Notes: generated by a model from the letters alone, not told the origin. Shown: positions 540 to 55,800, counted from the stretch's first letter. The stretch is DNA of 64,000 nucleotides from Ylistrum balloti (GCF_031769215.1 NW_026782116.1:1364001-1428000); one strand, 5' to 3'. Numbers and translations are program-made.

Positions 540-864
540 ACAGTCCGTTTCCTCCGAAAATACCATCATCTCCTCCGGCGGCTAAAGCTGCAGGTGGTGG
601 TGGTGGGTAAAAAGGGACAGCGTAGGGGGCTCGGATAACAGTGCTCTCAACCTTTCCGTATCCCTTTCCGTATCCGTGTCCGTACCCCTTTCCGTAACCC
701 TTTCCGTATGACATTCCTCCGTACTGGGGATATGACATCACGTATCCGCCGGAGTACAGGGGTTGTCCGTAGCTGTAGTCGTCATCAAAAAAGTCATCAC
801 CAAGACAGGCGCTGAGGCCTAATGCGACGACGACGACGAAAAGTGTGACACTGACGGTTCTCAT
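540..864 (-). CDS. Gly/Tyr-rich secreted protein, copy 1 (main coding exon; terminal exon not found in window)
   Basis: ATG at 864. Signal peptide MRTVSVTLFVVVVALGLSACLG, acidic DDFFDDD, GYGK/GYGH repeats, APYAVPFYPPPPP. Acceptor at 874 and phase-1 donor T|GTAAGT at 540. 5'UTR exon ends at 1099. Homology to the other copies stops at ~470, so the last exon probably lies off the left edge. Confidence 0.85.
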
Positions 865-5948: not shown

Positions 5949-6688
5949 CTAACCGAGCAGTCCTCCGTTGTTATTGAGGAGGAATGGCAGCAACAAAAGC
6001 AGGAACACTGAAAAATACGAAACGAAATTGGTGAATATAGCATACTATTTGTGATATGTCAGTTTTCAAGTTTGAAACAAATGACTTTTGCCCAATTTGC
6101 GTTTTCGATCACCATTTTCCTCGACATATAGATATATCAGCAGATTTCTCTTAGGATTATGCTATATATGTCAGTCATTAACAAAGCATGACTGATATAA
6201 TCAAAATCGGTTGTTTGATTTAACTCTGATACAAAGACATGGCAGATATAATCGAAATCGCTTGTTTGATTTAACTCTGATACAAATCATGACTGACATA
6301 ATGGAAATCGCTTGTTAGATTAAACTCTGATACAAAGACATGACTACTTACACAGTCCGTTTCCTCCGAAAATACCATCATCTCCTCCGGCGGCTAAAGC
6401 TGCAGGTGGTGGTGGTGGGTAAAAAGGGACAGCGTAGGGGGCTCGGATAACAGTGCTCTCAACCTTTCCGTATCCCTTTCCGTATCCGTGTCCGTATCCG
6501 TGTCCGTACCCCTTTCCGTAACCCTTTCCGTATGACATTCCTCCGTACTGGGGATATGACATCACGTATCCGCCGGAGTACTGGGGTTGTCCGTAGCTGT
6601 AGTCGTCATCAAAAAAGTCATCACCAAGACAGGCGCTGAGGCCTAATGCGACGACGACGACGAAAAGTGTGACACTGACGGTTCTCAT
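5949..6688 (-). CDS. Gly/Tyr-rich secreted protein, copy 2 (131 aa)
   Basis: Coding exons 6688-6352 and 6007-5949, joined phase 1 (tttttcag acceptor). The last exon adds LFLLLLLPFLLNNNGGLLG*. Carries one extra GYGH unit relative to copies 1 and 3. 5'UTR exon ends at 6917; TATA at 6963-6970. Confidence 0.88.
6187..6340. repeat. 51-bp intronic tandem repeat x3
   Basis: Unit catgactgatataatcaaaatcggttgtttgatttaactctgatacaaaga with period 51. Also present at ~12188-12340, and one unit at ~475-527. Confidence 0.9.
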
Positions 6689-11949: not shown

Positions 11950-12677
11950 CTAACCGAGCAGTCCTCCGTTGTTATTGAGGAGGAATGGCAGCAACAAAAG
12001 CAGGAACACTGAAAAATACGAAACGAAATTGGTTAATATAGTATACCATTTGTGAAATGTCAGTTTTCAAGATTGAAACAAATGACTTTTTCCCAATTTG
12101 CGTTTTCGATCACTAGTTTCCTCGACATATAGATATATCAGCAGATTTCTCTTAGGATTAGGCTATATGTGTCAGTCATTAACAAAGCATGACTTATATA
12201 ATCAAAATCGCTTGTTTGATTTAACTCTGATACAAAGACATGACTGATATAATCGAAATCGCTTGTTTGATTTAACTCTGATACAAATCATGACTGACAT
12301 AATGGAAATCGCTTGTTAGATTTAACTCTGATACAAAGACGTGACTACTTACACAGTCCGTTTCCTCCGAAAATACCATCATCTCCTCCGGCGGCTAAAG
12401 CTGCAGGTGGTGGTGGTGGGTAAAAAGGGACAGCGTAGGGGGCTCGGATAACAGTGCTCTCAACCTTTCCGTATCCCTTTCCGTATCCGTGTCCGTACCC
12501 CTTTCCGTAACCCTTTCCGTATGACATTCCTCCGTACTGGGGATATGACATCACGTATCCGCCGGAGTACTGGGGTTGTCCGTAGCTGTAGTCGTCATCA
12601 AAAAAGTCATCACCAAGACAGGCGCTGAGGCCTAATGCGACGACGACGACGAAAAGTGTGACACTGACGGTTCTCAT
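11950..12677 (-). CDS. Gly/Tyr-rich secreted protein, copy 3 (127 aa)
   Basis: Coding exons 12677-12353 and 12008-11950. Acceptor tatag| at 12690. Its own 5'UTR exon ends at 12876 (GTAAGT donor). Confidence 0.88.
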
Positions 12678-14173: not shown

Positions 14174-14212
14174 GTGTGTGACGTTTCGATGTCTGACACC
14201 TTCATCAGAAAA
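14174..14212 (-). ncRNA. Degenerate minimal hammerhead ribozyme (family 2, CUGAUGA-A / GAAACGUC type)
   Basis: CUGAUGA-A-GGUG-UCAGA-CAUC-GAAA-CGUC-ACAC on the minus strand. Helix II is intact; helix I pairing is poor. Confidence 0.55.
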
Positions 14213-16708
14213 AATGTATGGCTATAAACTGGTAATGGACATTTGAAAAGCATATCAGATGACGACACCAGTTCATACACCATTTGAATGATTGAGTTGA
14301 TCATAAGTTGTTGGGATGGGACATACAGAGACTAAGCAGAGAAAATCAGGAGGAAACTTCCAACAGGATACCCCCTACCACATAGACAAAAATCAATCAT
14401 TACCTCGTTGACAATGATAAATCAATGTAGTTATAATAAGTTAATCATCTGCTGTCCAACAGAAAAGATCTTTCAAATATCAAAATGCAAGCATTAACTC
14501 ATTCTCGATCTGTAGGGGTCTGAATGGTACTCAGTCTTTCTGTTTATCTCTTTGGACCAATGCATTTCCGATTTGTTCTTATGATCATTTTTTGCTAATT
14601 TGGTTTTTGTTCTACAATAGCATTAACATTACCCAAATTATTTGTGTCATTTTAACATTGTACTCTGATGTAGGTTAACACAATAATTTGGCTTGAACCC
14701 TTTCTTAAGCCGAAAGAAATAAACATAATAAATCTGGGATTTTCCGGTGGTTGAATTAATCCAATCAGTTCAAATTAAGAATATAAGGAGTAAGTTTTCT
14801 TTCCTCCAAATTGCTAGTATGATTTTTGTTTGATAAATACATATCTAAGTTGAAATTATTTTTGTTAATTATTACTTTTCGCCTTTCTGGTTTTCAATAC
14901 TTGCCAATCTATTTGGCAACAGTAGGGACAACAATTCAACGGTATTGTCCACATGAAGTGTATAATCTAATTTACTCTTGTGATCGTTAAAATTCATGAC
15001 TTTTTTACCGATTAAATACACAATATTATCTCACTAAAAATCACCGAAAATTTACAGGATGTAATAAGCGCATCTTAATGAAATAATCATCTCGATGAGA
15101 TGACAAACGCGTTTAAACATTTTATCTATGTTAAGAAGATGTTTTATAACGAGTAAACAGTTTGTAAACCAATTATAATCACATATTAGCGAGAAAAACA
15201 ACAAGCATATAAGCTATATGTATCTCTAATTTATTTTTCAAATAACTTTCATAGGGTTTGAGATTTGTGTTTATATTTTCTGAACACATCTATTAAAAAT
15301 TGTGCCGCAGGGTAAAGTAAACAGAGTATATTACTTATGTAGGTCTGATGATTGTAACATGTTATCAATATACCTGCCTTAGGTTGTATGCTGGAGCCTA
15401 CAGCAAGTCGTAATTATAAACATATATCATACGCCCAAATACGTTAATGTAGTAAAATTAGTGTAGTATTAAACTACGGTGTGTAATATCGTTATCTGTT
15501 GTATGATCTATACTTGTGCATAGAATATGAAATAAACAATGCCAGAGAGCGAACGCAATTTGATAACTACAATTCAATATGCAAATTAGCAAGGTGTTAC
15601 CCGTCGATATTTTAATATTGGTCAATTTGATGCCATGTTGAATGCAAGGCACCCTTTGTAATGCTCGCAGGCTAGTGATAATCCTCTATATAGACTGGGT
15701 TAACTTTTCTCTATTCCGTATTTTAGTATAATTGTGTTCCTAGGTCAACACGAAATGAAATGTACATTCATCCTAATGGGCTAAGATCTTCTTTCTCGAA
15801 CATGTATTCACTTTACATGGTTAAAATTGTACTATGTATAATTGTTCAGCTTATTTGCATTTTGTGAATCTTTTAGTGCTTATATTTCCACGCGAATCCT
15901 TGAAGGGATATTATGTAGAAAGGAGTAATCTTTTACCAGTCGATATGTCAAAAGGTCACAGTCCGTTCTGTAGTTCCAGCGAGCTAGCCATCCAAAGCTG
16001 ATAACGTACGCAATATTTTGTTTAATTTCTAACTACTTTGAATTTCCACACACATAATACATGAAGCGCCGTGACACAGTTGTCAGTGTGGCAATTAATT
16101 ATGTACTTTAACACTTACACCAACTCTTTATTATTTTTCCTGGAATATCAACATAACTGATGCTATTGATGTAAAGAGATTCTATATATTATGAGGACTG
16201 AACGGTTGTCCGCATAATGACTTCTATTTTAAATCAGTCGTAAAAAAGAAGAAAAAGAAAATAGCAACAGGTCAGCATAAACTATGGCAAAATATGAGCA
16301 AAAGAAAGATTTACTCGAAATCTCATAAAAAGGTACAAGGAGAATAAGAGAATGTATTCTGGAAGAGTATGAGTCTTCTGGCTTCATCGACGACACCAAT
16401 TACCATGTCCAAGGCATCTAACTACCAATGTTAGTATTGTAAAAGACGATTAGGCATTTAAAGTTAGAAAAGGCTTCAATTCAATTCAACAGTTTCCGAA
16501 ATTACTCGAAAATAAGTTTAGTAATTGACTTCTTTATCTAATTCTAACATATATTTGGAAATTGCGTCTTTTATAAAATCTTTGTTATTGAAAGTGGAAA
16601 ATAATACTGTCCCATAGGTTTGCAGTAACCTGTATACTAAGTTTATTATTTATTCGAATAATTTCACAATTCAGAGCTGATTTCGACTAATAATCCTTTA
16701 GACCCCTA

Positions 16709-16752
16709 GCATCACTGTCGAGACCCTGATGAACAAATCAACTATATGATGC
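16709..16752 (+). ncRNA. Degenerate hammerhead element copy (family 1) at the left edge of the 44-bp satellite
   Basis: gcatcactgtcgagaccctgatgaacaaatcaactatatgatgc aligns to the intact copy at 53048. The core is mutated (CUGUCGA, no GAAA). Confidence 0.6.
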
Positions 16753-16789
16753 AGATTGATAATAATCTAACTATATGATGAAGTTTAGT

Positions 16790-18390
16790 CATATGACTTT
16801 ATTTATCTCTATGCATTATACAGTTTAATACATTATACGGCTATATTTATCTCTATGTATGATACAGTTTAATACATTATACGGTTATAGTTATATCTAT
16901 ATATGATACAGTTTAATATCTATGTATGATATAGTTTAATACATTATACGGCTATATTTATCTCTATGTATGATACAGTTTAATACATTATACGGCTATA
17001 TTTATCTGTATGTATGATACAGTTTAATACATTATACGGCTATATTTATCTCTATGTATGATACAGTTTAATACATTATATGACTATATTTATCTCTATG
17101 TATGATACAGTTTAATACATTATACGGCTATATTTATCTCTGTGTATGATACAGCTAAATACATTATATGACTAATATATCTCTATGTAAGATACAGTTT
17201 AATACATTATACGGCTATATTTATCTCCATGTATGATACAGTTTAATACATTATACGGCTATATTTATCTCTATGTAAGATACAGTTTAATACATTATAT
17301 GGCTATATTTATCTCGATGTATGATACAGTTAAATACATTATACGGCTATATTTATATCTATGTATGATACAGTTTAATACATTATACGGCTATATTTAT
17401 ATCTATGTATGATACAGTTTAATACATTATACGGCTATATTTATCTCTATGTATGATACAGTTTAATACATTATATGACTATATTTATCTCTATGTATGA
17501 TACAGTTTAATACATTATATGACTATATTTATCTCTATGTATGATACAGTTTAATACATTATACGGCTATATTTATCTCTATGTATGATACAGTTAAATA
17601 CATTATACGGCTATATTTATCTCTATGTATGATACAGTTTAATACATTATACGGCTATATTTATATCTATGTATGATACAGTTTAATACATTATACGGCT
17701 ATATTTATATCTATGTAAGATACAGTTTAATACATTATACGGCTATATTTATCTCTATGTAAGATACAGTTTAATACATTATATGGCTATATTTATCACT
17801 ATGTATGATACAGTTAAATACATTATACGGCTATATTTATCTCTGTGTATGATACGGTTTAATACATTATATGGCTATATTTATCTCTATGTATGATACA
17901 GTTAAATACATTATACGGCTATATTTATCTCTGTGTATGATACGGTTTAATACATTATATGACTATATTTATCTCTATGTATGATACAGTTTAATACATT
18001 ATATGACTATATTTATCTCTATGTATGATACAGTTTAATACATTATATGACTATATTTATCTCTATGTATGATACAGTTAAATACATTATATGATTATAT
18101 TTATCTCTATGTATGATACAGTTTAATACATTATACGGCTATATTTATCTCTATGTATGATACAGTTTAATAATGGCTATATTTATCTCTATGTATGATA
18201 CAGTTTAATAATGGCTATATTTATCTCTATGTATGATACAGTTTAATAATGGCTATATTTATCTCTATGTATGATACAGTTTAATACATTATATGACTAT
18301 ATTTATCTCTATGTATGATACAGTTTAATAATGGCTATATTTATCTCTATGTATGATACAGTTTAATACATTATATGACTATATTTATCT
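16790..18390. repeat. 44-bp satellite, ~36 units (38-bp deletion variants near the right end)
   Basis: Unit tatgtatgatacagtttaatacattatacggctatatttatctc with measured period 44. Period is 38 at ~18173-18211. Confidence 0.97.
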
Positions 18391-18465
18391 GAAGTGTGAT
18401 TCTTTATTTGCATTTGCTATACATTTTATCTTTTGTGCAATATTCCTCCTTTATTTAGGCCTTAA

Positions 18466-18509
18466 GCATTACTGACGAGTGCTAGAGGGACGAAACAGTT
18501 GTATGATGC
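18466..18509 (+). ncRNA. Near-intact type I hammerhead ribozyme (family 1)
   Basis: GCAUUA-CUGACGA-GUGC-UAGAG-GGAC-GAAA-C-AGUU-G-UA-UGAUGC. Helix I pairs; helix II has one mismatch. Confidence 0.75.
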
Positions 18510-19998
18510 AGTTTGATTCATTGTTTGGTTCTACTGTATCAAAGTCTATGTTTTGATTAAAATTTTGTTATGTACTTTTCTGACTTTGTACAATCTTTAT
18601 TTTGAAGGCAAGCCGAAAATCTGCCCTGATCAACCTGCCTTTCTTGATATCTCTCACGGAAAACATGTCATTGGTATTGGTAAGTTTTCCTTAATTTTAG
18701 ATTTCCACGCAGCAGTTTTACGATTGTTGTTTTGTATTGCAGGATTCAAAACAATTTTCAATTAATACTGTTGCAAATTCTCTGATGTAGGCATTTCATA
18801 CACAAAATCAACATCTCTATGACACTATCAAAAAACAACCAAGGAATCTTTTTTCTCCATCTTAGTATACTCATTATAATTATGTAAGTTAAATGAATGT
18901 CTTAATTCCTTACAACCACGACAGCCATGTCTACACTGAATGAATTATGATGTGTTAGGTTCATAATTTCATATCGGAGTGAAACTGTCATTCGTCTTTT
19001 TTTCTCATGACCAAACCTCATATTGTCTGATTTCTGTATTGAACCATTATTCTCAAAATTCAAATCAGCATGGCAAACGACCGAAGGCAATATTTATACA
19101 CAACTTGACAAAAATAATCCATAACACCAAACGTCTTGAAATCAAATGCGGGTTTCCGTCAACTACCTTGCTTTTCATGATCATGAGATATCACTATTCA
19201 ACTAGAAATCCGAAACTATTTTATAGTAATAATGGAGTATATGGAATCCACGTGTGTTAAAATAGAGAAATGTATATACCGGTATCTAAATAAGGCGAAA
19301 TACATTCCTTATTACCGTATAAATATCTATATTATTTTACGGAACATATTTATACTCTTACCTTTTAACACTAGTTCGATTTTGTATACCTATAGTTATC
19401 ACTCATCATACGTATTTATAATAAGTTACATGACAATTTCAATTTTAACTTCTTGTTGGTCAATATTTTTCTAAATGTGCAAGATAATGCTTACTCTGTG
19501 AATAAGTTTAAACAAACATAGAAATGACCTACATCAGCAACCTCCCTCTGACATTGATTGAACATAAAACAAAAGTTGAACTCTTCTCTGTTTACTTCGA
19601 CAGTGCTTGTTGTTAACCTTGTTCTTACTGTGGAAGTGACACGATAATTTCGTTTCTTGAATAAATGGTATGCTTTATTGTTGTTGGAGGGGTAACAAGT
19701 ACAATGTTCCGGCAGTCGAGTCCCACTAAATGATAATAATATAACCCACAATTCACTGCTTTGTTTCAATGTTATCTTTCTTTTAATTCTTGTGGAACTT
19801 GTGTTCAAATGATGCTGCAAGCCATATCTTAATTAATCTGAATAGAGACACGATTCAGAATATATACATGTACTTGACATTGTTCTAAAATCATCTGATA
19901 TATTTGAAAATAATGATATTCAATTATGGGGCTAGTGCACTTCCGATCCCTTTACATTTTCCTTAGTCGTCCCCTAGGCTTCAAAATTAAGGTCTTTA

Positions 19999-20042
19999 GC
20001 ACCAATGACGAGTCCTAGAAGGAAGAAAAAGCTGCATCGTGC
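19999..20042 (+). ncRNA. Degenerate hammerhead element copy (family 1)
   Basis: gcaccaatgacgagtcctagaaggaagaaaaagctgcatcgtgc. Shares the flanking tail and the upstream ggggctagtgca with the 52250 copy. Confidence 0.6.
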
Positions 20043-21129
20043 AGTTTACTTCATTGCTTAGCTCTGCTGTAAATTAACTTTTATTTGTTTTACTTGTACA
20101 TGATTGTCGTTCTGTTCTTATTTGACTCATTAGATTTTCGTTAATTTATGTCAAGAAATAGGAAATAGGTTCAGTAAAGATTCCATCTATTTAAGAAAAG
20201 ATTCAGAAACATTTAGGTAGAACATGTCAATATTCCCTTCCCACAGAGTCTGTCGTAACGGTCACGTAGAAAGAATATACATCAAATGGTATCAGCAGGA
20301 AGTTAATACTGCGAACAAGAATATCCGAGTATGGTATTGTTTATTATTGAAAACGATTATAAACCACTTCCCACATTAGATGTACATATCAGCACTTTCT
20401 TAAACAAACCGCAAACAAAAAAAATATATGTATGGTAGTTGCTAAGTGATGAGTTTTATTTAATATGGAAACAAAAAAAGCAAAAAAAAAAAAAACAAAA
20501 AAAATAAATAAATAAACAACTATCGCGCTAATCGTTTGATGAAGTGGTCTGTTCACTGAATGAAAAGGATTTGTGATGTATGGATTGACTGTTATTCAAT
20601 CCATTAGCAGATAACGTCTTTGTCGATAACAATTGTTGAAATGAAAACAGTAAGCATAAACTTTCAATTTTACATAACATTTATTTCTTATCGAAACAGC
20701 AAACAAAATAAAAATACCCCATGAATACAGCTCCATCCTTGACGAAGAATGAGATTTCTGAAATAGAGACACAATGATATTTACATATATATATAAATAA
20801 ATATACGCCTACCCCATAATGATGTATAAGTCTAAAATTATATATTTTTTGACGCTAACTGGTCGTAATGTATTTGATAGTGAATGTTAAATACTTAATT
20901 GAAGAATCAGCTGGTTTTCGTAAACTAAAATGTCTTTAGAAATATAGCGAATGAAAATTTATTCATAGTATAAATGCAAGCATCCCATTATGTTTACCAT
21001 CAAACGTATTAAAGATAATATTGACAAATATTTGCGTTTTTGTTTGAGAACAATTCTTTAACCTATGATTATCGATTAATAGTAAAGCATTAATACGAAT
21101 AGTAAACTTACTGTGACAGGTGAGTCTAT

Positions 21130-21796
21130 TTAACCAGAGTTGTTATTCAAAAGCTGGATGACCAGGAATAAGAGAAACACTGAAAAACAATTGGAAAGTC
21201 TATATATATAACAGCTTGTGAAGTAACCAAAAAAATGTTCAGTATTTTTTCCAGTTTCGGAGTTATTTAACACAACCATCCACATTATCTTGATAATCTT
21301 GTTTCAAAAAGTATCATTTTTTTCAGAAGCATATACGTATATACAGTAATTTTGTGAATATCATCGTCATAAATATAATTGGCATTATAATCAAATTACT
21401 TATATTCAATATCAAGAACGGAAGTACAGAAATCTGTCAATATGCTCGGCAGTAAGAATGCTTACGTTGAAATGTTCCACCGCCGAAAATGGAGTCACTG
21501 GTATCTGCCACTGGAAGAGGGGGGATAAACATTGGAACAGAGTAAGGTGCGCTCACTACAACCTCCTTCTTAACCACAGGTTTTTTCCCGTATCCGGAGT
21601 ATCCAGAATGCGTTGGATATGTTGAGTATCCCTTGGCATATCCTCCCGCACTGTACTGACTGATATGTCCCTTTTGTAGGTACTGACTGCCTTTGTAATC
21701 AAGTCCCAGCCCTCCCCCATAGTTACCATAGGCCTCGCCTCTGGCCGCCACCACACAACATACGACCACCGCAACGGCAACTATTACAGTTTTCAT
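21130..21796 (-). CDS. Diverged Gly/Tyr-rich secreted protein paralog (copy 4)
   Basis: Coding exons 21796-21466 (tttcag|ATG; ends DSIFGGGTFQ, C|GTAAG, phase 1) and 21179-21130 (LFLLFLVIQLLNNNSG*). 5'UTR exon ends at 22153 (AAG|GTGAGT). Same architecture as copies 1-3. Confidence 0.85.
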
Positions 21797-22208
21797 CTGA
21801 AACATTAGCAAATAGATATCTTCATTTAGATCAAGGTTCGCATAGATATTGTATTGTAAATTCAAACTGAAAATCTCAATTTTCTGACTTTCCAAATTAT
21901 CGAAAACGAAATTAGCTATTGTGATTATTTAATCTGTTAGGGAATACGCTTGATATACTCACAAATTCAGTTTATTTAGAAAATGTGTGACATGAATATC
22001 GAATAATGGGTTTTCCGTCTATATTAGTATTGGATAATTCCGAGCATTTCATAATTTCAAGACAGCTGGTTAGGTGTTCGAAATTTAAAAATCATTTAAA
22101 CAATGTTAAAATGACACTAATAAATGATGTTATTTTTATAGCAAAAACTCACCTTTGTTCCGTAGCTTGGATTCTTTTATTAGTTTTTACGGGCGAAAAA
22201 ATAGCTCC

Positions 22209-29869: not shown

Positions 29870-32750
29870 CGAAAGGTGACAGGAATTCATAGTTTTTGAC
29901 AGAGGCGTGATATCAAAGGCGATAGGAATTGATAATTTTTGACATAGGCGTGATGTCAAAAGCGATATGAATTGATAGTTGTGGATAGAGGCGTGATATT
30001 AAAGGCGAAAGGAATTGATAGTTGTGGACAGAGGCGCGATATTAAAGGCGAAAGGGCTTGATAGTTTTTGTCAGAGGGGTGATATCAAAGGCGATATGAA
30101 TTGATAGTTGTGGACAGAGGCGTGATATTAAAGGCGATAGGGCTTGATAGTTTTTGTCAGAGGCGTGATATCAAAGGCGATAGGATTTGATAGTTGTGGA
30201 CAGAGGCGTGATATTAAAGGCGACAGTAATTGATAGTTGTGGACAGAGGCGTGATATTAAAGGCGACAGTAATTGATAGTTGTGGATAGAGGCGTGATAT
30301 TAAAGGCGAAAGGAATTGATAGTTGTGGACAGAGGCGTGATATTAAAGGCGAAAGGGCTTGATAGTTTTTGTCGGAGGCGTGATATTAAAGGCGATAGGA
30401 TTTGATAGTTGTGGACAGAGGCGTGATATTAAAGGCGATAGGGCTTGATAGTTTTTGTCAGAGGCGTGATATCAAAGGCGATAGGATTTGATAGTTTTTG
30501 TCAGAGGCGTGATATTAAAGGAGATATGAATTGATAGTTGTGGACAGAGGCGTGACATTAAAGGCGATATGAATTGATAGTTTTGGACAGAGGCGTGATA
30601 TTAAAGGCGAAATGAATTGATAGTTGTGGACAGAGGCGTGATATTAAAGGCGAAAGGGCTTGATAGTTTTTGTCAGAGGGGTGATATCAAAGGCGATATG
30701 AATTGATAGTTGTGGACAGAGGCGTGATATTAAAGGCGACAGTAATTGATAGTTGTGGACAGAGGCGTGATATTTAAGGCGATAGGGCCCGATAGTTTTT
30801 GTCAGAGGCGTGATATTAAAAGCGATAGGAATTGATAGTTGTGGACAGAGGCGTGATAGTAAAAGCGATAGGAATGGATAGTTGTGGACAGAAGCGTGAT
30901 ATTAAAGGCGATAGGAATTGATAGTTGTGGACAGATGCGTGATATTAAAGGTGATAGGGCCCGATAGTTTTTGTCAGAGGCGTGATATTAAAGGCGATAT
31001 GAATTGATAGTTGTGGACAGAGGTGTGATAGTAAAGGCGATAGGAATTGATAGATGTGGACAGAGGCGTGATATTAAAGGCGATAGGGCTTGATAGTTTT
31101 TGTCAGAGGCGTGATATCAAAGGCGATAGGATTTGATAGTTGTGGACAGAGGCGTGATATTAAAGGCGACAGTAATTGATAGTTGTGGATAGAGGCGTGA
31201 TATTAAAGGCGAAAGGAATTGATAGTTGTGGACAGAGGCGTGATATTAAAGGCGATAGGATTTGATAGTTGTGGACAGAGGCGTGATATTAAAGGCGATA
31301 GGGCTTGAAAGTTTTTGTCAGAGGCGTGATATCAAAGGCGATAGGATTTGATAGTTTTTGTCAGAGGCGTGATATTAAAGGAGATATGAATTGATAGTTG
31401 TGGACAGAGGCGTGACATTAAAGGCGATATGAATTGATAGTTTTGGACAGAGGCGTGATATCAAAGGCGATAGGATTTGATAGTTGTGGATAGAGGCGTG
31501 ATATTAAAGGCGATAGGGCCCAATAGTTTTTGTCAGAGGCGTGATATTAAAGGCGAAAGGGCTTGATAGTTTTTGTCAGAGGGGTGATATCAAAGGCGAT
31601 AGGGCTTGATAGTTTTTGTCAGAGGCGTGATATTAAAGGCGAAAGGATTTGATAGTTGTGGACAGAGGCGTGATTTCAAAGGCGACAGTAATTGATAGTT
31701 GTGAATAGAGGCGTGATATTAAAGGCGAAAGGAATTAATAGTTGTGGACATAGGCGTGATATTAAAGGCGAAAGGGCTTGATAGTTTTTGTCAGAGGGGT
31801 GATATCAAAGGCGATAGGGCTTGATAGTTTTTGTCAGAGGCGTGATATTAAAGGCGATAGGATTTGATAGTTGTGGACAGAGGCGTGATTTTAAAGGCGA
31901 TAGGGCCCGATAGTTTTTGTCAGAGGCGTGATTTTAAAGGCGATAGGGCCCGATAGTTTTTGTCAGAGGCGTGATATCAAAGGCGATAGGATTTGATAGT
32001 TGTGGATAGAGGCGTGATATTAAAGGCGATGGGGCCCGATAGTATTTGTCAGAGGCGTGATATCAAAGGCGATAGGATTTGATAGTTATGAACAGAGGCG
32101 TGATATTAAAGGCGACAGTAATTGATAGTTGTGGACAGAGGCGTGATATTAAAGGCGAAATGAATTGATAGTTGTGGATAGAGGCGTGATATTAAAGGCG
32201 AAAGGGCTTGATAGTTTTTGTCAGAGGGATGATATCAAAGGCGATATGAATTGATAGTTGTGGACAGAGGCGTGATATTAAAGGCGACAGTAATTGATAG
32301 TTGTGGACAGAGGCGTGATATTTAAGGCGATAGGGCTTGATAGTTTTTGTCAGAGGCGTGATATTAAAGGCGAAATGAATTGATAGTTGTGGACAGATGC
32401 GTGATATTAAAGGTGATAGGGCCCGATAGTTTTTGTCAGAGGCGTGATATTAAAAGCGATAGGAATTGATAGTTATGGACAGAGGCGTGATAGTAAAAGC
32501 GATAGGAATGGATAGTTGTGGACAGAAGCGTGATATTAAAGGCGATAGGAATTGATAGTTGTGGACATGCGTGATATTAAAGGTGATAGGGCCCGATAGT
32601 TTTTGTCAGAGGCGTGATATTAAAGGCGATATGAATTGATAGTTGTGGACAGATGCGTGATATTAAAGGTGATAGGGCCCGATAGTTTTTGTCAGAGGTG
32701 TGATAGTAAAGGCGATAGGAATTGATAGATGTGGACAGAGGCGTGATATT
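29870..32750. repeat. 43-bp satellite, ~67 units, two interspersed variants
   Basis: Units gatagttgtggacagaggcgtgatattaaaggcgataggaatt and gatagtttttgtcagaggcgtgatatcaaaggcgatagggctt, period 43. Confidence 0.97.
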
Positions 32751-33059
32751 AGTGACGTTGATATAGGGTGTAACACATTGGTAAAATGTCATTTAATTCA
32801 TGTTTCGGCATACTGTAAAGATTGTATTTTTGATGATTCAAATATTCGAGGTTTTACTACAAGCTAGGAGCCAATATATATATTTTCCACCACGGCAGTC
32901 ATAAAATGAATTATTGTTTTGGGTTTTTTATTCGTCTTATTTCCTTCTCATCTATTTGTTGCGGTTTCCTTCCATCAGGAGAAATGGTCTGTGTTACCAT
33001 GGTTGTGTCCTAGTCTGAACTATTTTAACAGTCTATCGTCCTTTTTAAATCTGTCTGGA

Positions 33060-42662: not shown

Positions 42663-43804
42663 TTTTTAGGTCATCTGACCCGAAGGGTCCGATGACCTAT
42701 AGTCATCATGCTTCGTCCGTCGTCGTCCGCCGTGCGCCGGCCGTGCGCCGTCCGTAAACTTTTCATTCAAACGACTTCTTCTCAAATACTAGAAGGTCTA
42801 GGGGGCTAATACATGGCACAGAGGATACTGGCATGGAGCTCTACCAAGTTTGTTCAAATGAATGACCTTGACCCACTTTAAAGGTCACAGGGGTCAAATA
42901 TGTTAAAATCTTTAAACAACTTCTTCTCAATAACCAAAAGGCTCAGATTGCTGATATTGTGCCTGTGGCATGCTGGGATGAAGGGCTATCAAGTCTGTTT
43001 AAATGAATGACCTTGAACAACTTTCAAGGTCACAGGGGTCAAATATGTCAAAATCTTTAAATAACTTCTTCTCAAATACTAGAAGGCCTAGGGGGCTAAT
43101 ACTTGGCCCATAGCATGCTGGCATGGAGCCCTACAAAGTTTGTTCAAATGAATGACCTTGGCCCACTTTCAAGGTCACAGGGGTCAAATATGTTAAAATA
43201 TACAAAGGACTTCATCTCAATAAGCAAAAGTCTATGAGTGCCGATATTGGGTCTGTAGCATGCTGGGAGGAAAGGCTACCAAGTTTATTTAAATGAATGA
43301 CCTTGAACAACTTTCAAGGTCGCAGGGGTCAAATATGTCAAAATCTTTAAATAACTTCTTCTCAAATACTAGAAGGCCTAGGGGGCTAATACTTAGCCCA
43401 TAGCATGCTGGCATGGAGCCCTACAAAGTTTGTTCAAATGAATGACCTTGGCCCACTTTCAAGGTCACAGGGGTCAAATATGTTAAAATATACAAAGGAC
43501 TTCATCTCAATAAGCAAAAGTCTATGAGTGCCGATATTGGGTCTGTAGCATGCTGGGAGGAAAGGCTACCAAGTTTATTCAAATGAATGACCTCAACCCA
43601 CTTTCAAGGTCACAGGGGTCAAATATGTTAAAATATACAAACGACTTCTTCTCAACAAGCAAAAGTCCATGAGTGCTGATATTGGGCCTGTAAGATGCTT
43701 GGAGGAGAGGCTACCAAGTTTGTTCAAATGAATGACCTCAACCCACTTTCTAGGTTTGGCTTGCTTTTTGTCAGATGACCGTTAAGGCCCATGGGCCTCT
43801 TGTT
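42663..43804 (+). mobile_element. Non-autonomous Helentron/HINE-type element with internal 145-bp tandem repeats
   Basis: Subterminal inverted repeat ggtcatctgac (42669) / gtcagatgacc (43770). 5' hairpin, gtcc-type microsatellite, 3' palindrome aggcccatgggcct and T-rich ends. About seven internal units at period 145. Confidence 0.85.
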
Positions 43805-44469: not shown

Positions 44470-47400
44470 ATGGAAAGTATACAATTTGGACAAGTCATCA
44501 GAGAGAAAGAATTCTGCATGAGAAAAGGTGCGACTTTCCTTAATCATGGTTCATATGGAATGGTGCCTCGACGCGTCAAGGAACTCCAGAAAAAGTAATT
44601 ACTATTCGTTGGAAATGAGTTGTCTAATCTTTGTTAGTTATAAGCTCCTGTTGTTTTGATAATTAACATAAAATGACGAACTGTTTTAAAGTTTTTCATT
44701 GTGCCTAGGCTCTGCAGGCCAGGAGGAGGTGGAGGGTTGGTGGGTGGGGGATATGAACTGTGCTTATTGTCCCCATTGCGTTAAATAATCTTTTATATAT
44801 AAATGTTGTTATTGTTCTCAATATCTCGTTTTAAGAATTAGCTCACATTTAGAACAATATAGAATTATAATCAACACATAGTAGATATAAGTACGTGTAA
44901 ACAGGAGACAACTGACAGGATCGAAGAATAACAGAATTATAATCAATATATAGTAGATAGACGTACGTGTGAACAGGAGACAACTGACAGGATCGAAGAA
45001 CAACATAGAATTATAATCAATATATAGTAGATAGACGTACGTGTGAACAGGAGACAACTGACAGGATCGAAGAATAACAGAATTATAATCAATATATAGT
45101 AGATAGACGTACGTGTGAACAGGAGACAACTGACAGGATCGAAGAATAACAGAATTATAATCAATATATAGTAGATAGACGTACGTGTGAACAGGAGACA
45201 ACTGACAGGATCGAAGAATAACAGAATTATAATCAATATATAGTAGATAGACGTACGTGTGAACAGGAGACAACTGACAGGATCGAAGAATAACAGAATT
45301 ATAATCAATATATAGTAGATAGACGTACGTGTGAACAGGAGACAACTGACAGGATCGAAGAATAACAGAATTATAATCAATATATAGTAGATAGACGTAC
45401 GTGTGAACAGGAGACAACTGACAGGATCGAAGAATAACAGAATTATAATCAATATATAGTAGATAGACGTACGTGTGAACAGGAGACAACTGACAGGATC
45501 GAAGAATAACAGAATTATAATCAATATATAGTAGATAGACGTACGTGTGAACAGGAGACAACTGACAGGATCGAAGAACAACATAGAATTATAATCAATA
45601 TATAGTAGATAGACGTACGTGTGAACAGGAGACAACTGACAGGATCGAAGAATAACAGAATTATAATCAATATATAGTAGATAGACGTACGTGTGAACAG
45701 GAGACAACTGACAGGATCGAAGAACAACATAGAATTATAATCAATATATAGTAGATAGACGTACGTGTGAACAGGAGACAACTGACAGGATCGAAGAATA
45801 ACAGAATTATAATCAATATATAGTAGATAGACGTACGTGTGAACAGGAGACAACTGACAGGATAGAAGAATAACAGAATTATAATCAATATATAGTAGAT
45901 AGACGTATGTGTGAACAGGAGACAACTGACAGGATCGAAGAATAACAGAATTATAATCAATATATAGTAGATAGACGTACGTGTGAACAGGAGACAACTG
46001 ACAGGATCGAAGAATAACAGAATTATAATCAGTATATAGTAGATAGACGTACGTGTGAACAGGAGACAACTGACAGGATCGAAGAATAACAGAATTATAA
46101 TCAATATATAGTAGATAGACGTACGTGTGAACAGGAGACAACTGACAGGATCGAAGAACAACATAGAATTATAATCAATATATAGTAGATAGACGTACGT
46201 GTGAACAGGAGACAAGTGACAGGATCGAAGAACAACATAGAATTATAATCAATATATAGTAGATAGACGTACGTGTGAACAGGAGACAAGTGACAGGATC
46301 GAAGAACAACATAGAATTATAATCAATATATAGTAGATAGACGTATGTGTGAACAGGAGACAACTGACAGGATCGAAGAATAACAGAATTATAATCAATA
46401 TATAGTAGATAGACGTACGTGTGAACAGGAGACAAGTGACAGGATCGAAGAACAACATAGAATTATAATCAATATATAGTAGATAGACGTATGAACAGGA
46501 GACAATATCGAAGAATAACAGAATTATAATCAATATATAGTAGATAGACGTACGTGTGAACAGGAGGCAACTGACAGGATCGAAGAATAACAGAATTATA
46601 ATCAATATATAGTAGATAGACGTACGTGTGAACAGGAGACAACTGACAGGATCGAAGAACAACATAGAATTATAATCAATATATAGTAGATAGACGTACG
46701 TGTGAACAGGAGACAACTGACAGGATCGAAGAACAACATAGAATTATAATCAATATATAGTAGATAGACGTACGTGTGAACAGGAGACAACTGACAGGAT
46801 CGAAGAACAACATAGAATTATAATCAATATATAGTAGATAGACGTACGTGTGAACAGGAGACAACTGACAGGATCGAAGAACAACATAGAATTATAATCA
46901 ATATATAGTAGATAGACGTACGTGTGAACAGGAGACAACTGACAGGATCGAAGAATAACAGAATTATAATCAATATATAGTAGATAGACGTACGTGTGAA
47001 CAGGAGACAACTGACAGGATCGAAGAATAACAGAATTATAATCAATATATAGTAGATAGACGTACGTGTGAACAGGAGACAACTGACAGGATCGAAGAAT
47101 AACATAGAATTATAATCAATATATAGTAGATAGACGTACGTGTGAACAGGAGACAACTGACAGGATCGAAGAATAACATAGCATTATAATCAATATATAG
47201 TAGATAGACGTACGTGTAAACAGGAGACAACTGACAGGATCGAAGAACAACATAGAATTATAATCAATATATAGTAGATAGACGTACGTGTGAACAGGAG
47301 ACAACTGACAGGATCGAAGAACAACATAGAATTATAATCAATATATAGTAGATAGACGTACGTGTGAACAGGAGACAACTGACAGGATCGAAGAATAACA

Positions 47401-48871
47401 GAATTATAATCAATATATAGTAGATAGACGTACGTGTGAACAGGAGACAACTGACAGGATCGAAGAATAACAGAATTATAATCAATATATAGTAGATAGA
47501 CGTACGTGTGAACAGGAGACAACTGACAGGATCGAAGAATAACAGAATTATAATCAATATATAGTAGATAGACGTACGTGTGAACAGGAGACAACTGACA
47601 GGATCGAAGAATAACATAGAATTACAATTAAAATGGACAAAATATACATTGACTATGCGTCATGCAGTATAAGACGTGGGAACGAAATAAGATATCATAT
47701 AACAATGACAAAAGATTCACTATATTCGAACAGACTAGTTGTCATTCACAACACGGAATAGCCTCAGTGAGCTTAGAAAATATAAGTGTGTTTCAGGTAT
47801 TTGTACGTGACAGACGAACATCCAGATGACTGGTTCCAGAGAAAGAGCAAGGGGCTGTGGATGGCGGCGAGGGACTTGGCTGCATCACTCGTCAACTCAG
47901 ACGTTGACGACATTGTGCTGGTCCAAAATGCAACTACGGGTACATCTATAAAAAGAAAATAAATTATTCAAGTGATTCCTCACATGTATAATGAAATATT
48001 AGCCAATGGAGGCGTCTTATACAAAGATGTTAAGAGTTAATCTAAATGTTATGTATCGCTTGGATTTCTAAACTGAACAAAAATTCTCAGCTGAAATGTT
48101 TGTCCCCTGAAGAACAGTATAAGAGGACTGGAAATATATAATTGGCGAAACAATCTTTTAGTTTTGTAATGATATGTTGATGATTTAAAAGAATACACAT
48201 TTTCTTCCCTCTACAAGGTATCAACACAGTATTAAAGGCACTCAAGCTGAAGGAAACTGAGGCAATTCTGGTCACAAGCAACACATATGCAGCAATAAGA
48301 AATACAGCCCACCATATTTCCACGGGCGGTTGTGGTATAGCCATTTATGTATTGATAGAGTCAATATTGCTAGACATTGATCCTGATTCGATCTAGACAT
48401 AATATAAAGGTTTGAGCGATCAGTCAGCAACACAGGTGCCGGATTATGTAATGTAAAAAATTGGTAAAAAAATCTTGAATCATAAAGAGAATGAGTTAGG
48501 ATTTCATGATATCTGTACTGTATCGATCCCTGACTGATATATGATATATTCCTCTCAAACATCAATTATCATTTTTAGATGAAGGATGTAAATAAGTGCT
48601 AAAAACAAACACATATGTTATACTTTGTCTACATGTACCTAAAGTTGTTTATAAACACAATGACGTTGTTGACCTCGGATAACATTCCCCTGTAGGAGGA
48701 CAATTACTTGTGATGGATATCTGCTTCCCTATCCAATCAGAAGACGAAATTGTACAACAATACAACACTTTCCTCAGCCAGCACCCAAATATTAAAATTG
48801 CTGTAGTTGGTAAGTTACTTTATGGTTAATATGCCTAAACTACCCCCTCAATCCTCCTCCTCCTCCTCCTC

Positions 48872-52838: not shown

Positions 52839-55800
52839 CACATCTGATTATTCATCACCTGTTGTAACGGAATTCGGTCATCCTATCAGAGAGGCAGAAT
52901 TCTCACTGAGGAAAGGCTCTACCTTTCTTAACAATGCTGCAAGAGGAAGTATTCCAAGACGAGTTCGGGAAATTCATTTAAGGTATGCCAGTACGAACTA
53001 CAAGGTATAAAGGTCATATTTGGGCGCAATATGGTTTTTAGGTCTTAGCATCACTGACGAGTCCTGGAAAGACGAAACAGCTGTATGATGCAGTTTAATT
53101 CATTGTTTGGCTCTACTGTATCTCACTCTAAATCAGGAAAAGGCGCTATTCACTTTTGTGTCCTTTGTTAAATCTTTGAAAAAAAATCGTGAAATTTTTT
53201 CATAAAACAATAGTAAGTACCAAATCAGCAACCAGATGTTAACACCGTAAAATTCTCAATTGAACAATTATGTGATTCTCATATTGCTTGCGACGTAGTA
53301 CACGCATACACGTCCTTTTCAGACTAGAGATAAATTCTAACCATCCCATTTGGTAAACATTGTAACCGTGTTGTAAATGAAATGGTTTACTAGATACATT
53401 GACGAAATCGACGATCACCCTGACGACTGGATGAGAAGGAAGTTAAAAAACATGTGGATTGCAGCAAGAGACTGTGCAGCAAGGTTTATCAATGCTGATC
53501 CTGAGGACTTCGTCTTTGTCCAGAATGCAACAACAGGTAATCATATTGTGATGAACACACAGCTTTATTACCCTAATCAGGATATCATGAGAAAACATTA
53601 GTTTCTTGTTCTTTAAGATGAAAGCTTTCCTTGATTCTTTTGACATTTTGCTCATCTTTCGTAAATTAAGTGTTAGTTTAAAAGTTCAGTTAAAACTTAT
53701 ACTTAAAGCTTATACTTTTGCCTTTTTCTTGATTTTGATTAGTTACTACAAAGTCAGAACTTCCAGATACAAAACGTTCTAAGCACAACACAGTATTACA
53801 TTTAAGATGAATGAGGTGTCCACGCATTGGTATTCTCAGAACGTACACTATAAATGTTTTCTTTCGATGGTTGTACAAAAAGGTTGAGAACACACAGGGA
53901 ATATTTTTCACGGAAGTCACGATACAAACTACTGTTTTCTGAAATTTTCTTTTCGTGGTACATGATGCATCTGCTTTTTACGATATCATTCGATCCTCGC
54001 AACAGCGAAAATTTGATTAACTCTTGTACCTCAGGTTTTAACTCTGTCCTGAAGACCTTTCCGTTTACACATGAGGATGCCTTGATGTTTACAAACAACT
54101 CATTCGGAGCAGTACAGAACACATGCCGCCAACTATCAACCAATCTAAAAGGTTATTTTAATGTATACAATCCTCTATATATATCCATGCAGTAAAGTCA
54201 GATGTTGTTTGTGTGTATACATCATTGAAAGCAACCTGAATGGCGTTTTACTGATATATATATAATTCTCTTATATAATGAAAACATGCAAATTCCATTA
54301 CACTAGTGATTGACTTGGTGGAATTTATACCACTAGTCAATGCTGGACACCGTTTTTCGTATGGAAAAGCCATTACCATGAGAGCGAGGAATTTTCAGAA
54401 TCAGACTTTGTAAAGTTACGATATGAAGGCTTTTGTTTCATTTCTTTCCTGGAGTTGGTAACCACAACAGTAATGATTATCAGATTAGTACCATTACACT
54501 GTTATTATGGCATACACTTCGAACTAACTACCAACATACATACATCTGTTATACATGACCGTATTTCCATATGATTGATTGGTCCATTTTCGATTGCATG
54601 ACTTAAATGATCCATACCTCTTCTATAACATTTATCATGCCTTCGATCACCGATTAAAAAAAGAACTGTTGGGAACATAGAATAGAAATTCTTATAACAC
54701 GACCAGTAGACGATAAGACTGTGGCGTTTCGATGACTACACGGTCACCTTCATCAGACAAATTACCAGTGTGGAGCGTACTAGACACTGAAGTACGTAAG
54801 GCACGGGATGGTACGGAATCGACCAACTTTTTCAGCTGCACTATATAGTCCGGTCTGATGAAGGTGACCGTGTAATCGAAACGTCACACTTTTATCTCCT
54901 ACTGGTTGTGTTTTAAGAACTTCTATTCTAATGGCATTACCAACCTGAAGAAATTATTCCAAAATAACTGTTGAGAACGTATATTTAATTACATATAATA
55001 GTGTTGTGTTGCCTTATCATTGAAACAATGATAGCTGAACTGGCATGTTTAGTGCCTTTTATAAACAGGAATACCCATACTTGTGTCCAAGCAGTTCATA
55101 TTTTACAGCTTTTCAATTTGCACAGTCAGTCATATTTTCCAGGTATGAAAGCGCACACTATGAAAATATCATTTCCTATCGAAAGTGAAGACGATTTAGT
55201 TGAAGAGCATCGCAAATTCATAATGGAGCACCCAGATATAAAACTAGTCGTTGTAGGTATGTATTTATAAGTTATTATAGATTTGAACGTTTTTATTACC
55301 TAGAGTAAGGGACTTTTAAGATGTATTCAAAGCTTATAGATTGCGGCCACTCAAACCACATTCATACATAAGAAGAATATGTCGTTTAGCATGAAATCTA
55401 GAATCTCTTGTCCTAATGCAAGTCATGAAAAATATATTGAAGTATGGGGAAAAACTTTAATAGTCATAGATATGATCACGAACAATATGAAAAGGACATT
55501 CTTTAATCGATTGTTTTGAGAAAACAGAACCTGGAGTATTGTTTGTGTTAAACCTTATGCCTACATAACAGCTGAATCTTCAAACCACTGCTATGTACAT
55601 CACTTTTATTGGTCATCCTTCTAGATCACATAACAAGTCAGACTGCGCTGAAGTTTCCCGTACACAAGATTGTCAAACTGTGTAAGGATATGAACGTAAT
55701 GGTACTTGTAGATGGCGCCAACGCGCCTGGGCAGGTGGCTTTGGACATGAAGAGTTTGGACCCGGATTTTTACTGTGGTACGTTTTATCAGAAAGATGTT

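What the first reader, a model, noticed from the sequence alone, without database searches (positions are those of the whole stretch)
16709..18509. A satellite born from the tail of a hammerhead ribozyme element and bracketed by two ribozyme copies
Seen: the 44-bp unit (tgtatgatacagtttaatacattatacggctatatttatctc+ta) matches the family-1 element from its cleavage triplet onward (53082-53124, tgtatgatgcagtttaattcattgtttggctctactgtatctc) at 35 of 43 aligned positions by hand. The array grades directly out of a degenerate ribozyme copy (16709-16752) through two imperfect units. A second, near-intact ribozyme in the same orientation follows at 18466-18509. Established: tandem hammerhead-containing satellites and retrozymes exist in animals, but their monomers contain the whole ribozyme. 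Inference: here only the 3' cleavage-product end was amplified, about 36 times. This could reflect reiterative reverse transcription or slippage at the cleavage site, or a ~1.75 kb ribozyme-bounded unit that could be excised as RNA. I do not know of this configuration being described.
Basis: partly seen in the sequence, partly recalled or inferred. Interest (0 to 1): 0.8.

Follow-up and report, generated by a model that had tools for sequence, protein, structure and literature searches.

The report
Minisatellite grown from a ribozyme element's tail
A 1.6-kb, 44-base tandem repeat did grow out of the non-catalytic tail of one old, dead copy of a common hammerhead-ribozyme mobile element. It looks like ordinary DNA repeat expansion inside a decayed transposon, not a new ribozyme-driven process.

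Summary
TRF finds a 44-bp array at 16800-18390 (36 copies). No dinucleotide shuffle out of 5000 scores as well.

The element is a dispersed, roughly 310-bp, 5'-truncating retroelement with thousands of copies. It carries a canonical metazoan type I hammerhead, and consensus copies reach Rfam RF00163 at 34.1 bits.

The interpretation needs correcting:
- **Array position.** The array lies inside one old copy (A). That copy's own 3' end follows the last unit at 18415-18444.
- **Left ribozyme.** Copy A's hammerhead is dead (A6U, G12A, A15.1U, G16.2A).
- **Right ribozyme.** It belongs to a separate, younger, 5'-truncated copy (B, 18453-18597) lying 8 bp downstream.
- **Unit content.** Every unit keeps TGTA upstream of the cleavage site, which a cleaved 3' product would lack. 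No unit has a catalytic box.
- **Array history.** The array shows multi-unit duplications and a block of 38-bp deletion variants. The tail-only unit was found at this locus alone.
- **Independent support.** Both array edges appear in contigs from four other DNA runs.

The genome is full of 20-50-bp minisatellites. The same family also forms abundant spacer-less 45-bp hammerhead arrays, which this scan has already reported on other DNA. My verdict is an ordinary transposon-derived minisatellite. No RNA data were available.

The parts
16697..16760 (+). Copy A, 5' part: short leader plus a dead hammerhead (16709-16752) of an old element copy that starts at consensus position 169.
   Evidence: BLAST of the family consensus on the window gives consensus 169-232 at 78%. 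The hammerhead matches at 34/44, with substitutions A6U, G12A, A15.1U and G16.2A.
16743..16811 (+). Two degenerate edge units (29 and 40 bp). The first is copy A's own tail start and ends in ATCTAAC, which is consensus 253-259.
   Evidence: Unit parsing. The junction ATCTAAC|TATATGATG fixes the repeated segment as consensus 215-259.
16800..18390 (+). 44-bp minisatellite of about 36 copies, derived from consensus 215-259. That span is the GTA triplet, the helix I 3' strand and the first ~35 nt of the tail. Units carry no CUGANGA box and no GAAA box.
   Evidence: TRF; alignment and shuffle test; unit table with multi-unit duplications and 38-bp deletion variants; tail-only unit found at this locus only.
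18391..18444 (+). Copy A, 3' end (roughly consensus 260-311, ending cttttgtgcaatatt), colinear with the last array unit.
   Evidence: BLAST gives consensus 215-311 at 18350-18444, 72%, E 9e-6. Local alignment gives consensus 278-311 at 18415-18444, with 21 of 2000 shuffles scoring as well.
18453..18597 (+). Copy B: a separate 5'-truncated element copy (consensus 168-311). Its near-intact type I hammerhead is at 18466-18509, with predicted cleavage after A18503.
   Evidence: BLAST 83.6%. Rfam RF00163 at 24.8 bits, below the gathering score of 34. Match to consensus 40/44, with a G.G mismatch in helix II and loop 3 reading AGUU.
53037..53176 (+).
   Evidence: BLAST 89.5%. Hammerhead at 53048-53091 matches at 42/44.
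19848..20092 (+). Copy D: a longer, older copy of the same family (consensus 3-273) lying 1.25 kb downstream in the same orientation.
   Evidence: BLAST 75% over 274 bp, E 1.5e-53.

Best explanation
The array is a transposon-derived minisatellite.

An old copy (A) of a roughly 310-bp hammerhead-bearing non-autonomous retroelement inserted here. This element is retrozyme-like or SINE-like and is probably mobilised by Penelope-like elements.

A 45-bp stretch of that copy then duplicated at the DNA level. The stretch is consensus 215-259 and runs from the T before the GTA triplet to the tail motif ATCTAAC. The first duplication was probably replication slippage or misaligned repair at a short AAC|T microhomology, next to the ACAGCTGT palindrome of stem III.

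The array then grew to about 36-39 units by slippage and unequal exchange. Its middle was partly homogenised and its edges decayed.

Copy A's ribozyme decayed along with the rest of the copy. A younger 5'-truncated copy (B) later landed head-to-tail 8 bp beyond A's 3' end. This produces the appearance of two bracketing ribozymes.

Shown: homology, colinearity, the dead core of A, the array's internal structure, its single-locus distribution and its presence in other individuals. Inferred: the slippage trigger, the order of events and mobilisation by Penelope-like elements.
For: - **Unit homology.** The unit is homologous to consensus 215-256 (0 of 5000 shuffles). The 35/43 count is reproduced.
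- **Array internal to copy A.** The 5' part matches consensus 169-232, and the last unit continues to consensus 311 at 18444.
- **Copy ages.** A is 72-78% identical to the consensus, against 83.6% for B and 89.5% for C.
- **Dead core.** A has lost A6, G12, A15.1 and G16.2.
- **Unit boundary.** All units retain TGTA upstream of the cleavage site, and the first junction reads ATCTAAC|TATATGATG.
- **Internal structure.** Units 26-27 repeat as 28-29, and 36-37 repeat as 38-39. The 38-bp deletion variant sits in a block (units 34, 35, 36 and 38). Neighbouring units are more alike than under shuffled order (46 of 5000).
- **Distribution.** The tail-only unit occurs only at this locus in 648 Mb.
- **Other registers.** Other arrays of the family use different registers and periods: 45 bp for the whole hammerhead, 48, 49 and about 53 bp for hybrids. 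Boundaries are therefore not tied to the cleavage site.
- **Background rate.** Minisatellites are common here. There are 5 arrays with period at least 20 and at least 5 copies in this 64-kb window, and 8 unrelated ones in 90 kb of other loci.
- **Independent support.** Both array edges appear in contigs of 4 runs from 2 studies, with flanks 2.5-5% diverged.
- **Known kind.** Transposon-derived minisatellites are well documented (PMC9659126; PMC11121367, by title).
Against: - The left boundary of the repeated segment lies only 4 nt from the predicted cleavage site. For a random 45-bp window in a 311-bp element this has a chance of roughly 3%, judged after the fact.
- The period matches the 45-bp whole-hammerhead arrays of the same family, and I cannot explain that match.
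- The AAC|T microhomology is read from today's decayed sequence and may postdate the first duplication.
- No RNA data could be examined, so transcription and processing are untested.
- A 45-bp array on another contig (C164) resembles the unit (z 7.4) and has no element beside it.
Confidence: 0.78

Rival explanations
1. The array was made during retrotransposition. The reverse transcriptase copied the tail from the 3' end and stalled at the structured or dimerised hammerhead (stem III palindrome). It then repeatedly realigned by microhomology to the ATCTAAC motif, laying down a tail multimer in one event. DNA-level turnover later reshaped the array.
For: The unit boundary (consensus 215) lies inside the stem III palindrome, 4 nt from the cleavage site. 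The hammerhead-to-tail region of this family gives rise to arrays in several registers. Elements with the same 14-unit hammerhead array sit at two unrelated sites, so arrays in this family can pass through an RNA stage.
Against: Only one tail-only array was found among thousands of copies. Units include the GTA triplet, so a cleaved template is excluded. Copy A still has its hammerhead upstream, so the enzyme would have had to pass the supposed block in the end. Internal structure shows stepwise growth by multi-unit duplication. Hybrid arrays elsewhere have boundaries inside helix II or inside the tail, not at the edges of the structure.
Confidence: 0.1
2. The locus is a working ribozyme-bounded unit, a giant retrozyme monomer. 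Transcripts are cut at both hammerheads and release a roughly 1.75-kb linear or circular RNA that carries the satellite.
For: Two same-strand hammerhead sequences lie 1757 bp apart. Non-LTR retrozymes are tandem type I hammerhead repeats expressed as circular RNAs (PMC7229834).
Against: The left hammerhead lacks A6, G12 and A15.1. The right one scores below Rfam's gathering threshold and has a helix II mismatch. This hammerhead type has a 1-bp helix III and needs a nearby partner to be active (PMC4209133). Neither copy folds better than shuffles as a monomer. The two ribozymes belong to two different element copies. No run on record as RNA holds the locus.
Confidence: 0.03
3. The satellite came first. 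A pre-existing AT-rich 44-45-bp satellite family, with a second member on contig C164, was captured by the element or merely resembles its tail.
For: The C164 array (45 bp x 95) aligns to the unit with z 7.4, with 0 of 3000 shuffles as good. It has no element relic in its flanks.
Against: The tail is single-copy in essentially all of the thousands of element copies. The array is colinear inside one copy with both element ends present. The C164 unit shows no similarity to the element consensus (z -0.7). An element copy with an 89% match to the unit exists, which gives a direct element-to-array path.
Confidence: 0.06

Closest known systems
Transposon-derived minisatellites and satellites. Examples are Alu-derived human minisatellites, the SINE-related PcH-Sat satellite of a limpet, and tandem-repeat-bearing MITEs of clams (PMC9659126 read here; PMC11121367 and PMC3879986 by title or abstract only).
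   Same: The repeat unit is a segment of a non-autonomous mobile element. The array sits inside or next to a decayed copy. Growth is by slippage and unequal exchange.
   Different: The source element here carries a hammerhead ribozyme. The amplified segment starts 4 nt before its cleavage site but excludes the catalytic core.
Non-LTR retrozymes: tandem type I hammerhead repeats of animals (PMC7229834; bioRxiv 10.64898/2026.07.22.740005).
   Same: The source family carries the canonical metazoan type I hammerhead: helix I of 6 bp, helix II of 4 bp, and a 1-bp helix III with the palindromic loop AGCU. It is AT-rich and has thousands of copies. Some copies lie head-to-tail.
   Different: Most copies here are dispersed, 5'-truncated single insertions with a fixed 3' end. 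The array at this locus has no ribozyme in its units, so it cannot process itself. No circular RNA evidence is available.
Ribozyme-containing satellites: newt satellite 2, Schistosoma Sm-alpha and cave-cricket pDo500 (as cited in PMC7229834). Also the spacer-less 45-bp hammerhead arrays of this same genome.
   Same: They are tandem arrays related to a hammerhead element. The period here (44 bp) nearly equals the 45 bp of this genome's own hammerhead arrays.
   Different: In those satellites every monomer holds a whole ribozyme. Here no unit holds a CUGANGA or GAAA box.
Penelope-like element pseudo-LTR arrangement (PMC4209133, PMC11167929).
   Same: Two same-orientation hammerhead-bearing repeats lie head-to-tail. 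[quoted passage not shown]
   Different: There is no reverse transcriptase or GIY-YIG reading frame between the repeats, only the minisatellite. Homology among family copies ends after about 320 bp.

Membership tests
Hammerhead ribozyme type I (Rfam RF00163) | Score at or above the family's gathering threshold (34 bits) | tested here: inconclusive
   Copy B scores 24.8 bits, below threshold. The window at gathering level gives no hit. Consensus-like copies of the same family in L023 and L025 score 34.1 bits, which just passes.
Hammerhead ribozyme type I (Rfam RF00163) | Intact catalytic core: CUGANGA, GAAA and an NUH cleavage triplet | tested here: met
   Met for copies B and C: CUGACGAG, CGAAAC and GUA are all present. 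Not met for copy A, which has A6U, G12A and A15.1U. Not met for any array unit, since no unit has either box.
Hammerhead ribozyme type I (Rfam RF00163) | Self-cleavage of the RNA | not testable with these tools
   No run on record as RNA holds the locus. Monomer folds are no better than shuffles (z -0.7 to -1.3). That fits a hammerhead with a 1-bp helix III that needs a partner copy (PMC4209133).
Non-LTR retrozyme | Tandem repeats of a 150-450-bp monomer, each with a type I hammerhead | tested here: inconclusive
   A and B lie head-to-tail 8 bp apart, and some other loci have adjacent copies. Most copies are single, 5'-truncated insertions. The A-to-B junction type was found only at this locus, though that search had low power.
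Non-LTR retrozyme | Expression as self-cleaved linear and circular RNA | not testable with these tools
   No RNA runs were available for this locus.
Transposon-derived minisatellite | Unit homologous to a segment of a dispersed element and embedded colinearly in one copy | tested here: met
   The unit is homologous to consensus 215-256, with 0 of 5000 shuffles as good. Copy A's 5' part lies before the array and its 3' end lies after it.
Transposon-derived minisatellite | Signs of local DNA-level growth: multi-unit duplications, blocks of variants, degenerate edges, confinement to one locus | tested here: met
   Unit table and neighbour test. Tail-only unit found at this locus only.
Satellite with a whole ribozyme per monomer (newt sat2, Sm-alpha, pDo500, and the 45-bp arrays of this genome) | Each monomer contains a complete hammerhead | tested here: not met
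   Units cover only consensus 215-259. The CUGANGA box (consensus 187-193), helix II and the GAAA box (consensus 207-210) are absent from every unit.
Penelope-like element (autonomous) | Reverse transcriptase and GIY-YIG reading frame between the hammerhead-bearing repeats | tested here: not met
   The only open frame between A and B is a 59-aa reading of the repeat itself. Homology among six extended loci stops after about 320 bp.

The most novel reading that the evidence does not exclude
The hammerhead-to-tail segment of this element family may be a hot spot where the mobilising reverse transcriptase stutters against the folded or dimerised ribozyme and lays down tandem arrays in variable registers. 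On this reading the tail-only array, the 48-53-bp hybrid arrays and the abundant 45-bp hammerhead arrays are products of one transposition-linked process. The ribozyme's structure, not its cleavage, would be seeding minisatellites.
Probability: 0.1. Interest if true: 0.6.

Novelty: new member of a known kind. Interest (0 to 1): 0.25.

Why it matters
The value is mainly as a control. This genome is full of spacer-less 45-bp hammerhead arrays, which invite ideas about tiny self-cleaving RNA circles. Here the same element family produced an array of nearly the same period from a segment with no ribozyme at all. That shows plain DNA-level expansion is enough to make such arrays in this family. The locus also gives a clean, datable example of a transposon tail turning into a minisatellite in a bivalve-type genome. 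It does not open a new mechanism.

Tried and rejected
1. **Tail as a decayed second hammerhead.** This would have explained the shared 45-bp period. Neither tail nor leader aligns to the hammerhead unit better than shuffles (767 and 616 of 3000 as good). Rejected.

2. **A, B and C as circularly permuted units, each preceded by a 3'-end relic.** The stretches upstream of A (z 0.1) and C (z 2.0) are not significant. Only A's own 3' end, which lies before B, is significant (z 3.5). Rejected for A and C.

3. **Recurrent 311-to-168 head-to-tail junction.** The pattern search found only this locus. The exact pattern has low power at 15-20% divergence among copies.

4. **Hammerhead-to-hammerhead spacing of about 150 bp genome-wide.** The search was swamped by 45-bp arrays at three-unit spacing, with 5358 matches. 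Uninformative for the question asked.

5. **A full-length autonomous parent upstream of long copies.** Six 10-kb loci share only about 320 bp.

6. **RNA evidence.** No RNA run holds the locus. The reads call could therefore use only DNA contigs.

7. **Gene context.** A possible short exon at about 18608-18672 was seen by eye (open frame 18553-18765) but not tested. I cannot say whether the array is intronic.

8. **C164 array.** It is related to the unit by score, but it has no element relic in its flanks and no similarity to the element consensus. Left unexplained.

The hybrid arrays on C85, C485 and C624 were therefore read only from the match table.

Full report
**What is there.** TRF finds a 44-bp array at 16800-18390 with 36.2 copies and 87% matches. 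I cut the region at the unit start motif and obtained 39 units from 16743 onward. Thirty are exactly 44 bp, with mean pairwise identity 93.9%. The edges are degenerate: units of 29, 40 and 23 bp lie near the left end.

**The source element.** A genome search with 18440-18560 shows that the ribozyme plus tail belongs to a dispersed repeat. The first look gave 1858 candidates, and every scored hit was 83-92% identical.

Aligning 22 copies, and then 12 copies with longer flanks, gives a consensus of about 311 bp:
- an upstream part of about 180 bp;
- the 45-bp hammerhead unit at consensus 180-224, with the GTA triplet at 216-218;
- a tail;
- a fixed 3' end reading ...CTTTTGTACAATCTT.

The 5' ends vary from copy to copy, which is the usual mark of target-primed reverse transcription. 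Six loci extended to 10 kb share only about 320 bp, so this is a non-autonomous element.

Summed contig depth over the hammerhead in other DNA runs is about 55,000, against about 15 for single-copy flanks.

The ribozyme has a helix I of 6 bp, a helix II of 4 bp, and a helix III of one C-G pair closed by the palindromic AGCU. That is the canonical metazoan type I hammerhead described as active only with a second copy nearby (PMC4209133). It is the type found in non-LTR retrozymes (PMC7229834), which a recent preprint derives from Penelope-like elements (bioRxiv 10.64898/2026.07.22.740005).

Consensus-like copies reach the Rfam Hammerhead_1 gathering score, at 34.1 against 34 bits. Copy B in the window reaches only 24.8 bits. 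The window as a whole gives no hit at gathering level.

**Is the homology more than chance?** The unit, taken as a dimer so that any phase can align, scores 42 against the consensus at positions 215-256. Dinucleotide shuffles give mean 16.8, sd 2.6 and maximum 35, and none of 5000 reaches the observed score. An element copy on contig C233 has a tail 89% identical to the unit. This gives a subfamily variant intermediate between consensus and satellite. The derivation from the tail is therefore solid.

**Anatomy of the locus.** BLAST of the consensus on the window gives:

| Window | Consensus | Identity | Reading |
|---|---|---|---|
| 16697-16760 | 169-232 | 78% | copy A, 5' part |
| each array unit | 215-256/257 | about 77-83% | array |
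| 18350-18444 | 215-311 | 72% | last unit running into copy A's 3' end |
| 18453-18597 | 168-311 | 83.6% | copy B |
| 53037-53176 | 169-311 | 89.5% | copy C |
| 19848-20092 | 3-273 | 75% | copy D |

A separate local alignment places consensus 278-311 at 18415-18444, with 21 of 2000 shuffles as good.

The array is therefore internal to copy A, whose own 3' end follows the last unit. Copy B is another, 5'-truncated copy that starts 8 bp later.

The bracketing is thus two neighbouring insertions of different age, not one unit with two ends. Head-to-tail neighbours occur elsewhere in the family. [quoted passage not shown] That link is inference.

**State of the ribozymes.**
- Copy A matches the consensus hammerhead at 34 of 44 positions. 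It has changes at A6 (CUGA to CUGU), G12, A15.1 and G16.2, which are core positions. It cannot be expected to cleave.
- Copy B matches at 40 of 44. All its boxes are intact, but it has a G.G mismatch in helix II, and loop 3 reads AGUU.
- Copy C matches at 42 of 44.
- As monomers none of them folds better than shuffles, which fits a hammerhead that depends on a partner.

A 1.75-kb RNA released by two cuts is therefore not supported.

**What the unit boundary says.** The first junction reads ATCTAAC|TATATGATG. ATCTAAC is consensus 253-259, so the repeated segment is consensus 215-259. That is 45 consensus positions, reduced to 44 by a one-base deletion.

It starts at the T before GTA, 4 nt upstream of the cleavage site, and every unit keeps TGTA. 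A cleaved 3' product would begin at UGAUGC and lack those bases. This excludes the idea that the 3' cleavage product was amplified from a cut RNA.

In today's sequence both breakpoints read AAC|T, a possible slippage microhomology. The left breakpoint lies inside the ACAGCTGT palindrome. Both points are suggestive only.

**How the array grew.**
- Units 26-27 repeat as 28-29, and units 36-37 repeat as 38-39.
- A 38-bp deletion variant sits in a block (units 34, 35, 36 and 38).
- Three versions of one site (TATGGC, TACGGC, TATGAC) occur in runs.
- Neighbouring units are more alike than under shuffled order (46 of 5000 permutations).

These are the marks of slippage and unequal exchange over time.

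**Distribution.** The tail-only unit occurs at this locus alone.

Contigs of four DNA runs, from two studies and two organism labels, reach into both array edges. They end at 16829 and start at 18361. Their flanks are 2.5-5% diverged from the window. The array is therefore real and not recent.

**The family context.** Many copies carry the hammerhead itself as a spacer-less 45-bp array of 2 to 16 units. Exact-pattern counting shows such arrays are very abundant. Earlier notes of this scan describe the same arrays on other DNA of this genome, call the genome a scallop, and read them as DNA-level growth inside a retrozyme-like element. I did not test the species.

Other arrays use other registers:
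- 49 bp on C85, made of the 3' two-thirds of the ribozyme plus the tail start, with no CUGANGA box;
- 48 bp on C485;
- about 53 bp on C624.

Array boundaries in this family are therefore not tied to the cleavage site.

Minisatellites of 20-50 bp are also common in general. There are five with at least 5 copies in this window, and eight unrelated ones in 90 kb of other loci. A rough extrapolation gives tens of thousands genome-wide. Several would then be expected to start inside this family's roughly 0.5 Mb of non-ribozyme sequence by chance.

**What remains open.**
- The near-equality of the 44-bp and 45-bp periods is unexplained. The tail is not a relic hammerhead.
- A 45-bp x 95 array on C164 resembles the unit (z 7.4). 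It shows no similarity to the element consensus and has no element in its flanks.
- No RNA run holds the locus, so transcription and cleavage are untested.
- A reverse-transcriptase stutter against the folded ribozyme cannot be excluded as the founding event. I give it about 10%.

**Verdict.** The configuration is best read as an ordinary transposon-derived minisatellite inside an old, dead element copy, with a younger copy beside it. It is a new member of a known kind and of modest interest. Its main use is as an internal control showing that arrays in this family can arise without any ribozyme activity.

Noticed in passing
window 14183-14208 (-), 54726-54756 (-), 54855-54882 (+): A second hammerhead-like family: CUGAUGA, then a 6-bp helix II, then GAAAC. 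Two of the copies face each other on opposite strands about 100 bp apart. This resembles the minimal Penelope-type hammerheads reported as close opposite-strand pairs (PMC4209133). Seen only as motif hits.
   Followed up: no
L021 (C706) and L023 (C27): Two element copies at unrelated sites both carry a 13.9-unit 45-bp hammerhead array. They are 90% identical over 762 bp and their flanks differ. Multi-hammerhead arrays may therefore be carried through transposition and not only grown in place.
   Followed up: partly
L060 3615-7751 (G000:C164:595614-599750): A 45-bp x 95-copy AT-rich array with an 86-bp higher-order period. Its unit aligns to the 44-bp unit here (z 7.4) but not to the element consensus, and no element relic lies in its flanks. 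The relationship is unexplained.
   Followed up: partly
G000:C85:1471117-1471619; C485:12796-13285; C624:277533-278015: Arrays of 49, 48 and about 53 bp. Their units are hybrids of part of the hammerhead and part of the tail. The C85 unit lacks the CUGANGA box. They were read only from the match table.
   Followed up: no
window 651-709 / 6463-6533 / 12464-12522 and 6181-6345 / 12182-12346: The same small tandem repeats recur at a spacing of about 6.0 kb. This suggests a tandem segmental duplication of about 6 kb at the start of the window.
   Followed up: no
window 16214-16427: An unrelated high-copy repeat just upstream of the locus. Summed contig depth is about 10,800 against about 15 for the flanks.
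   Followed up: no
window 29872-32751, 44861-47616, 42774-43755: Three more large tandem arrays: 43 bp x 67, 72 bp x 38 at 96% identity, and 145/290 bp. The window is unusually rich in minisatellites.
   Followed up: no
window 21437-21895 (-): An open frame of 152 aa whose translation, read by eye, has a signal-peptide-like start and a Gly/Tyr-rich body, possibly a secreted structural protein. A possible short exon with a CPDQP motif lies at about 18608-18672, right after copy B. Neither was searched.
   Followed up: no
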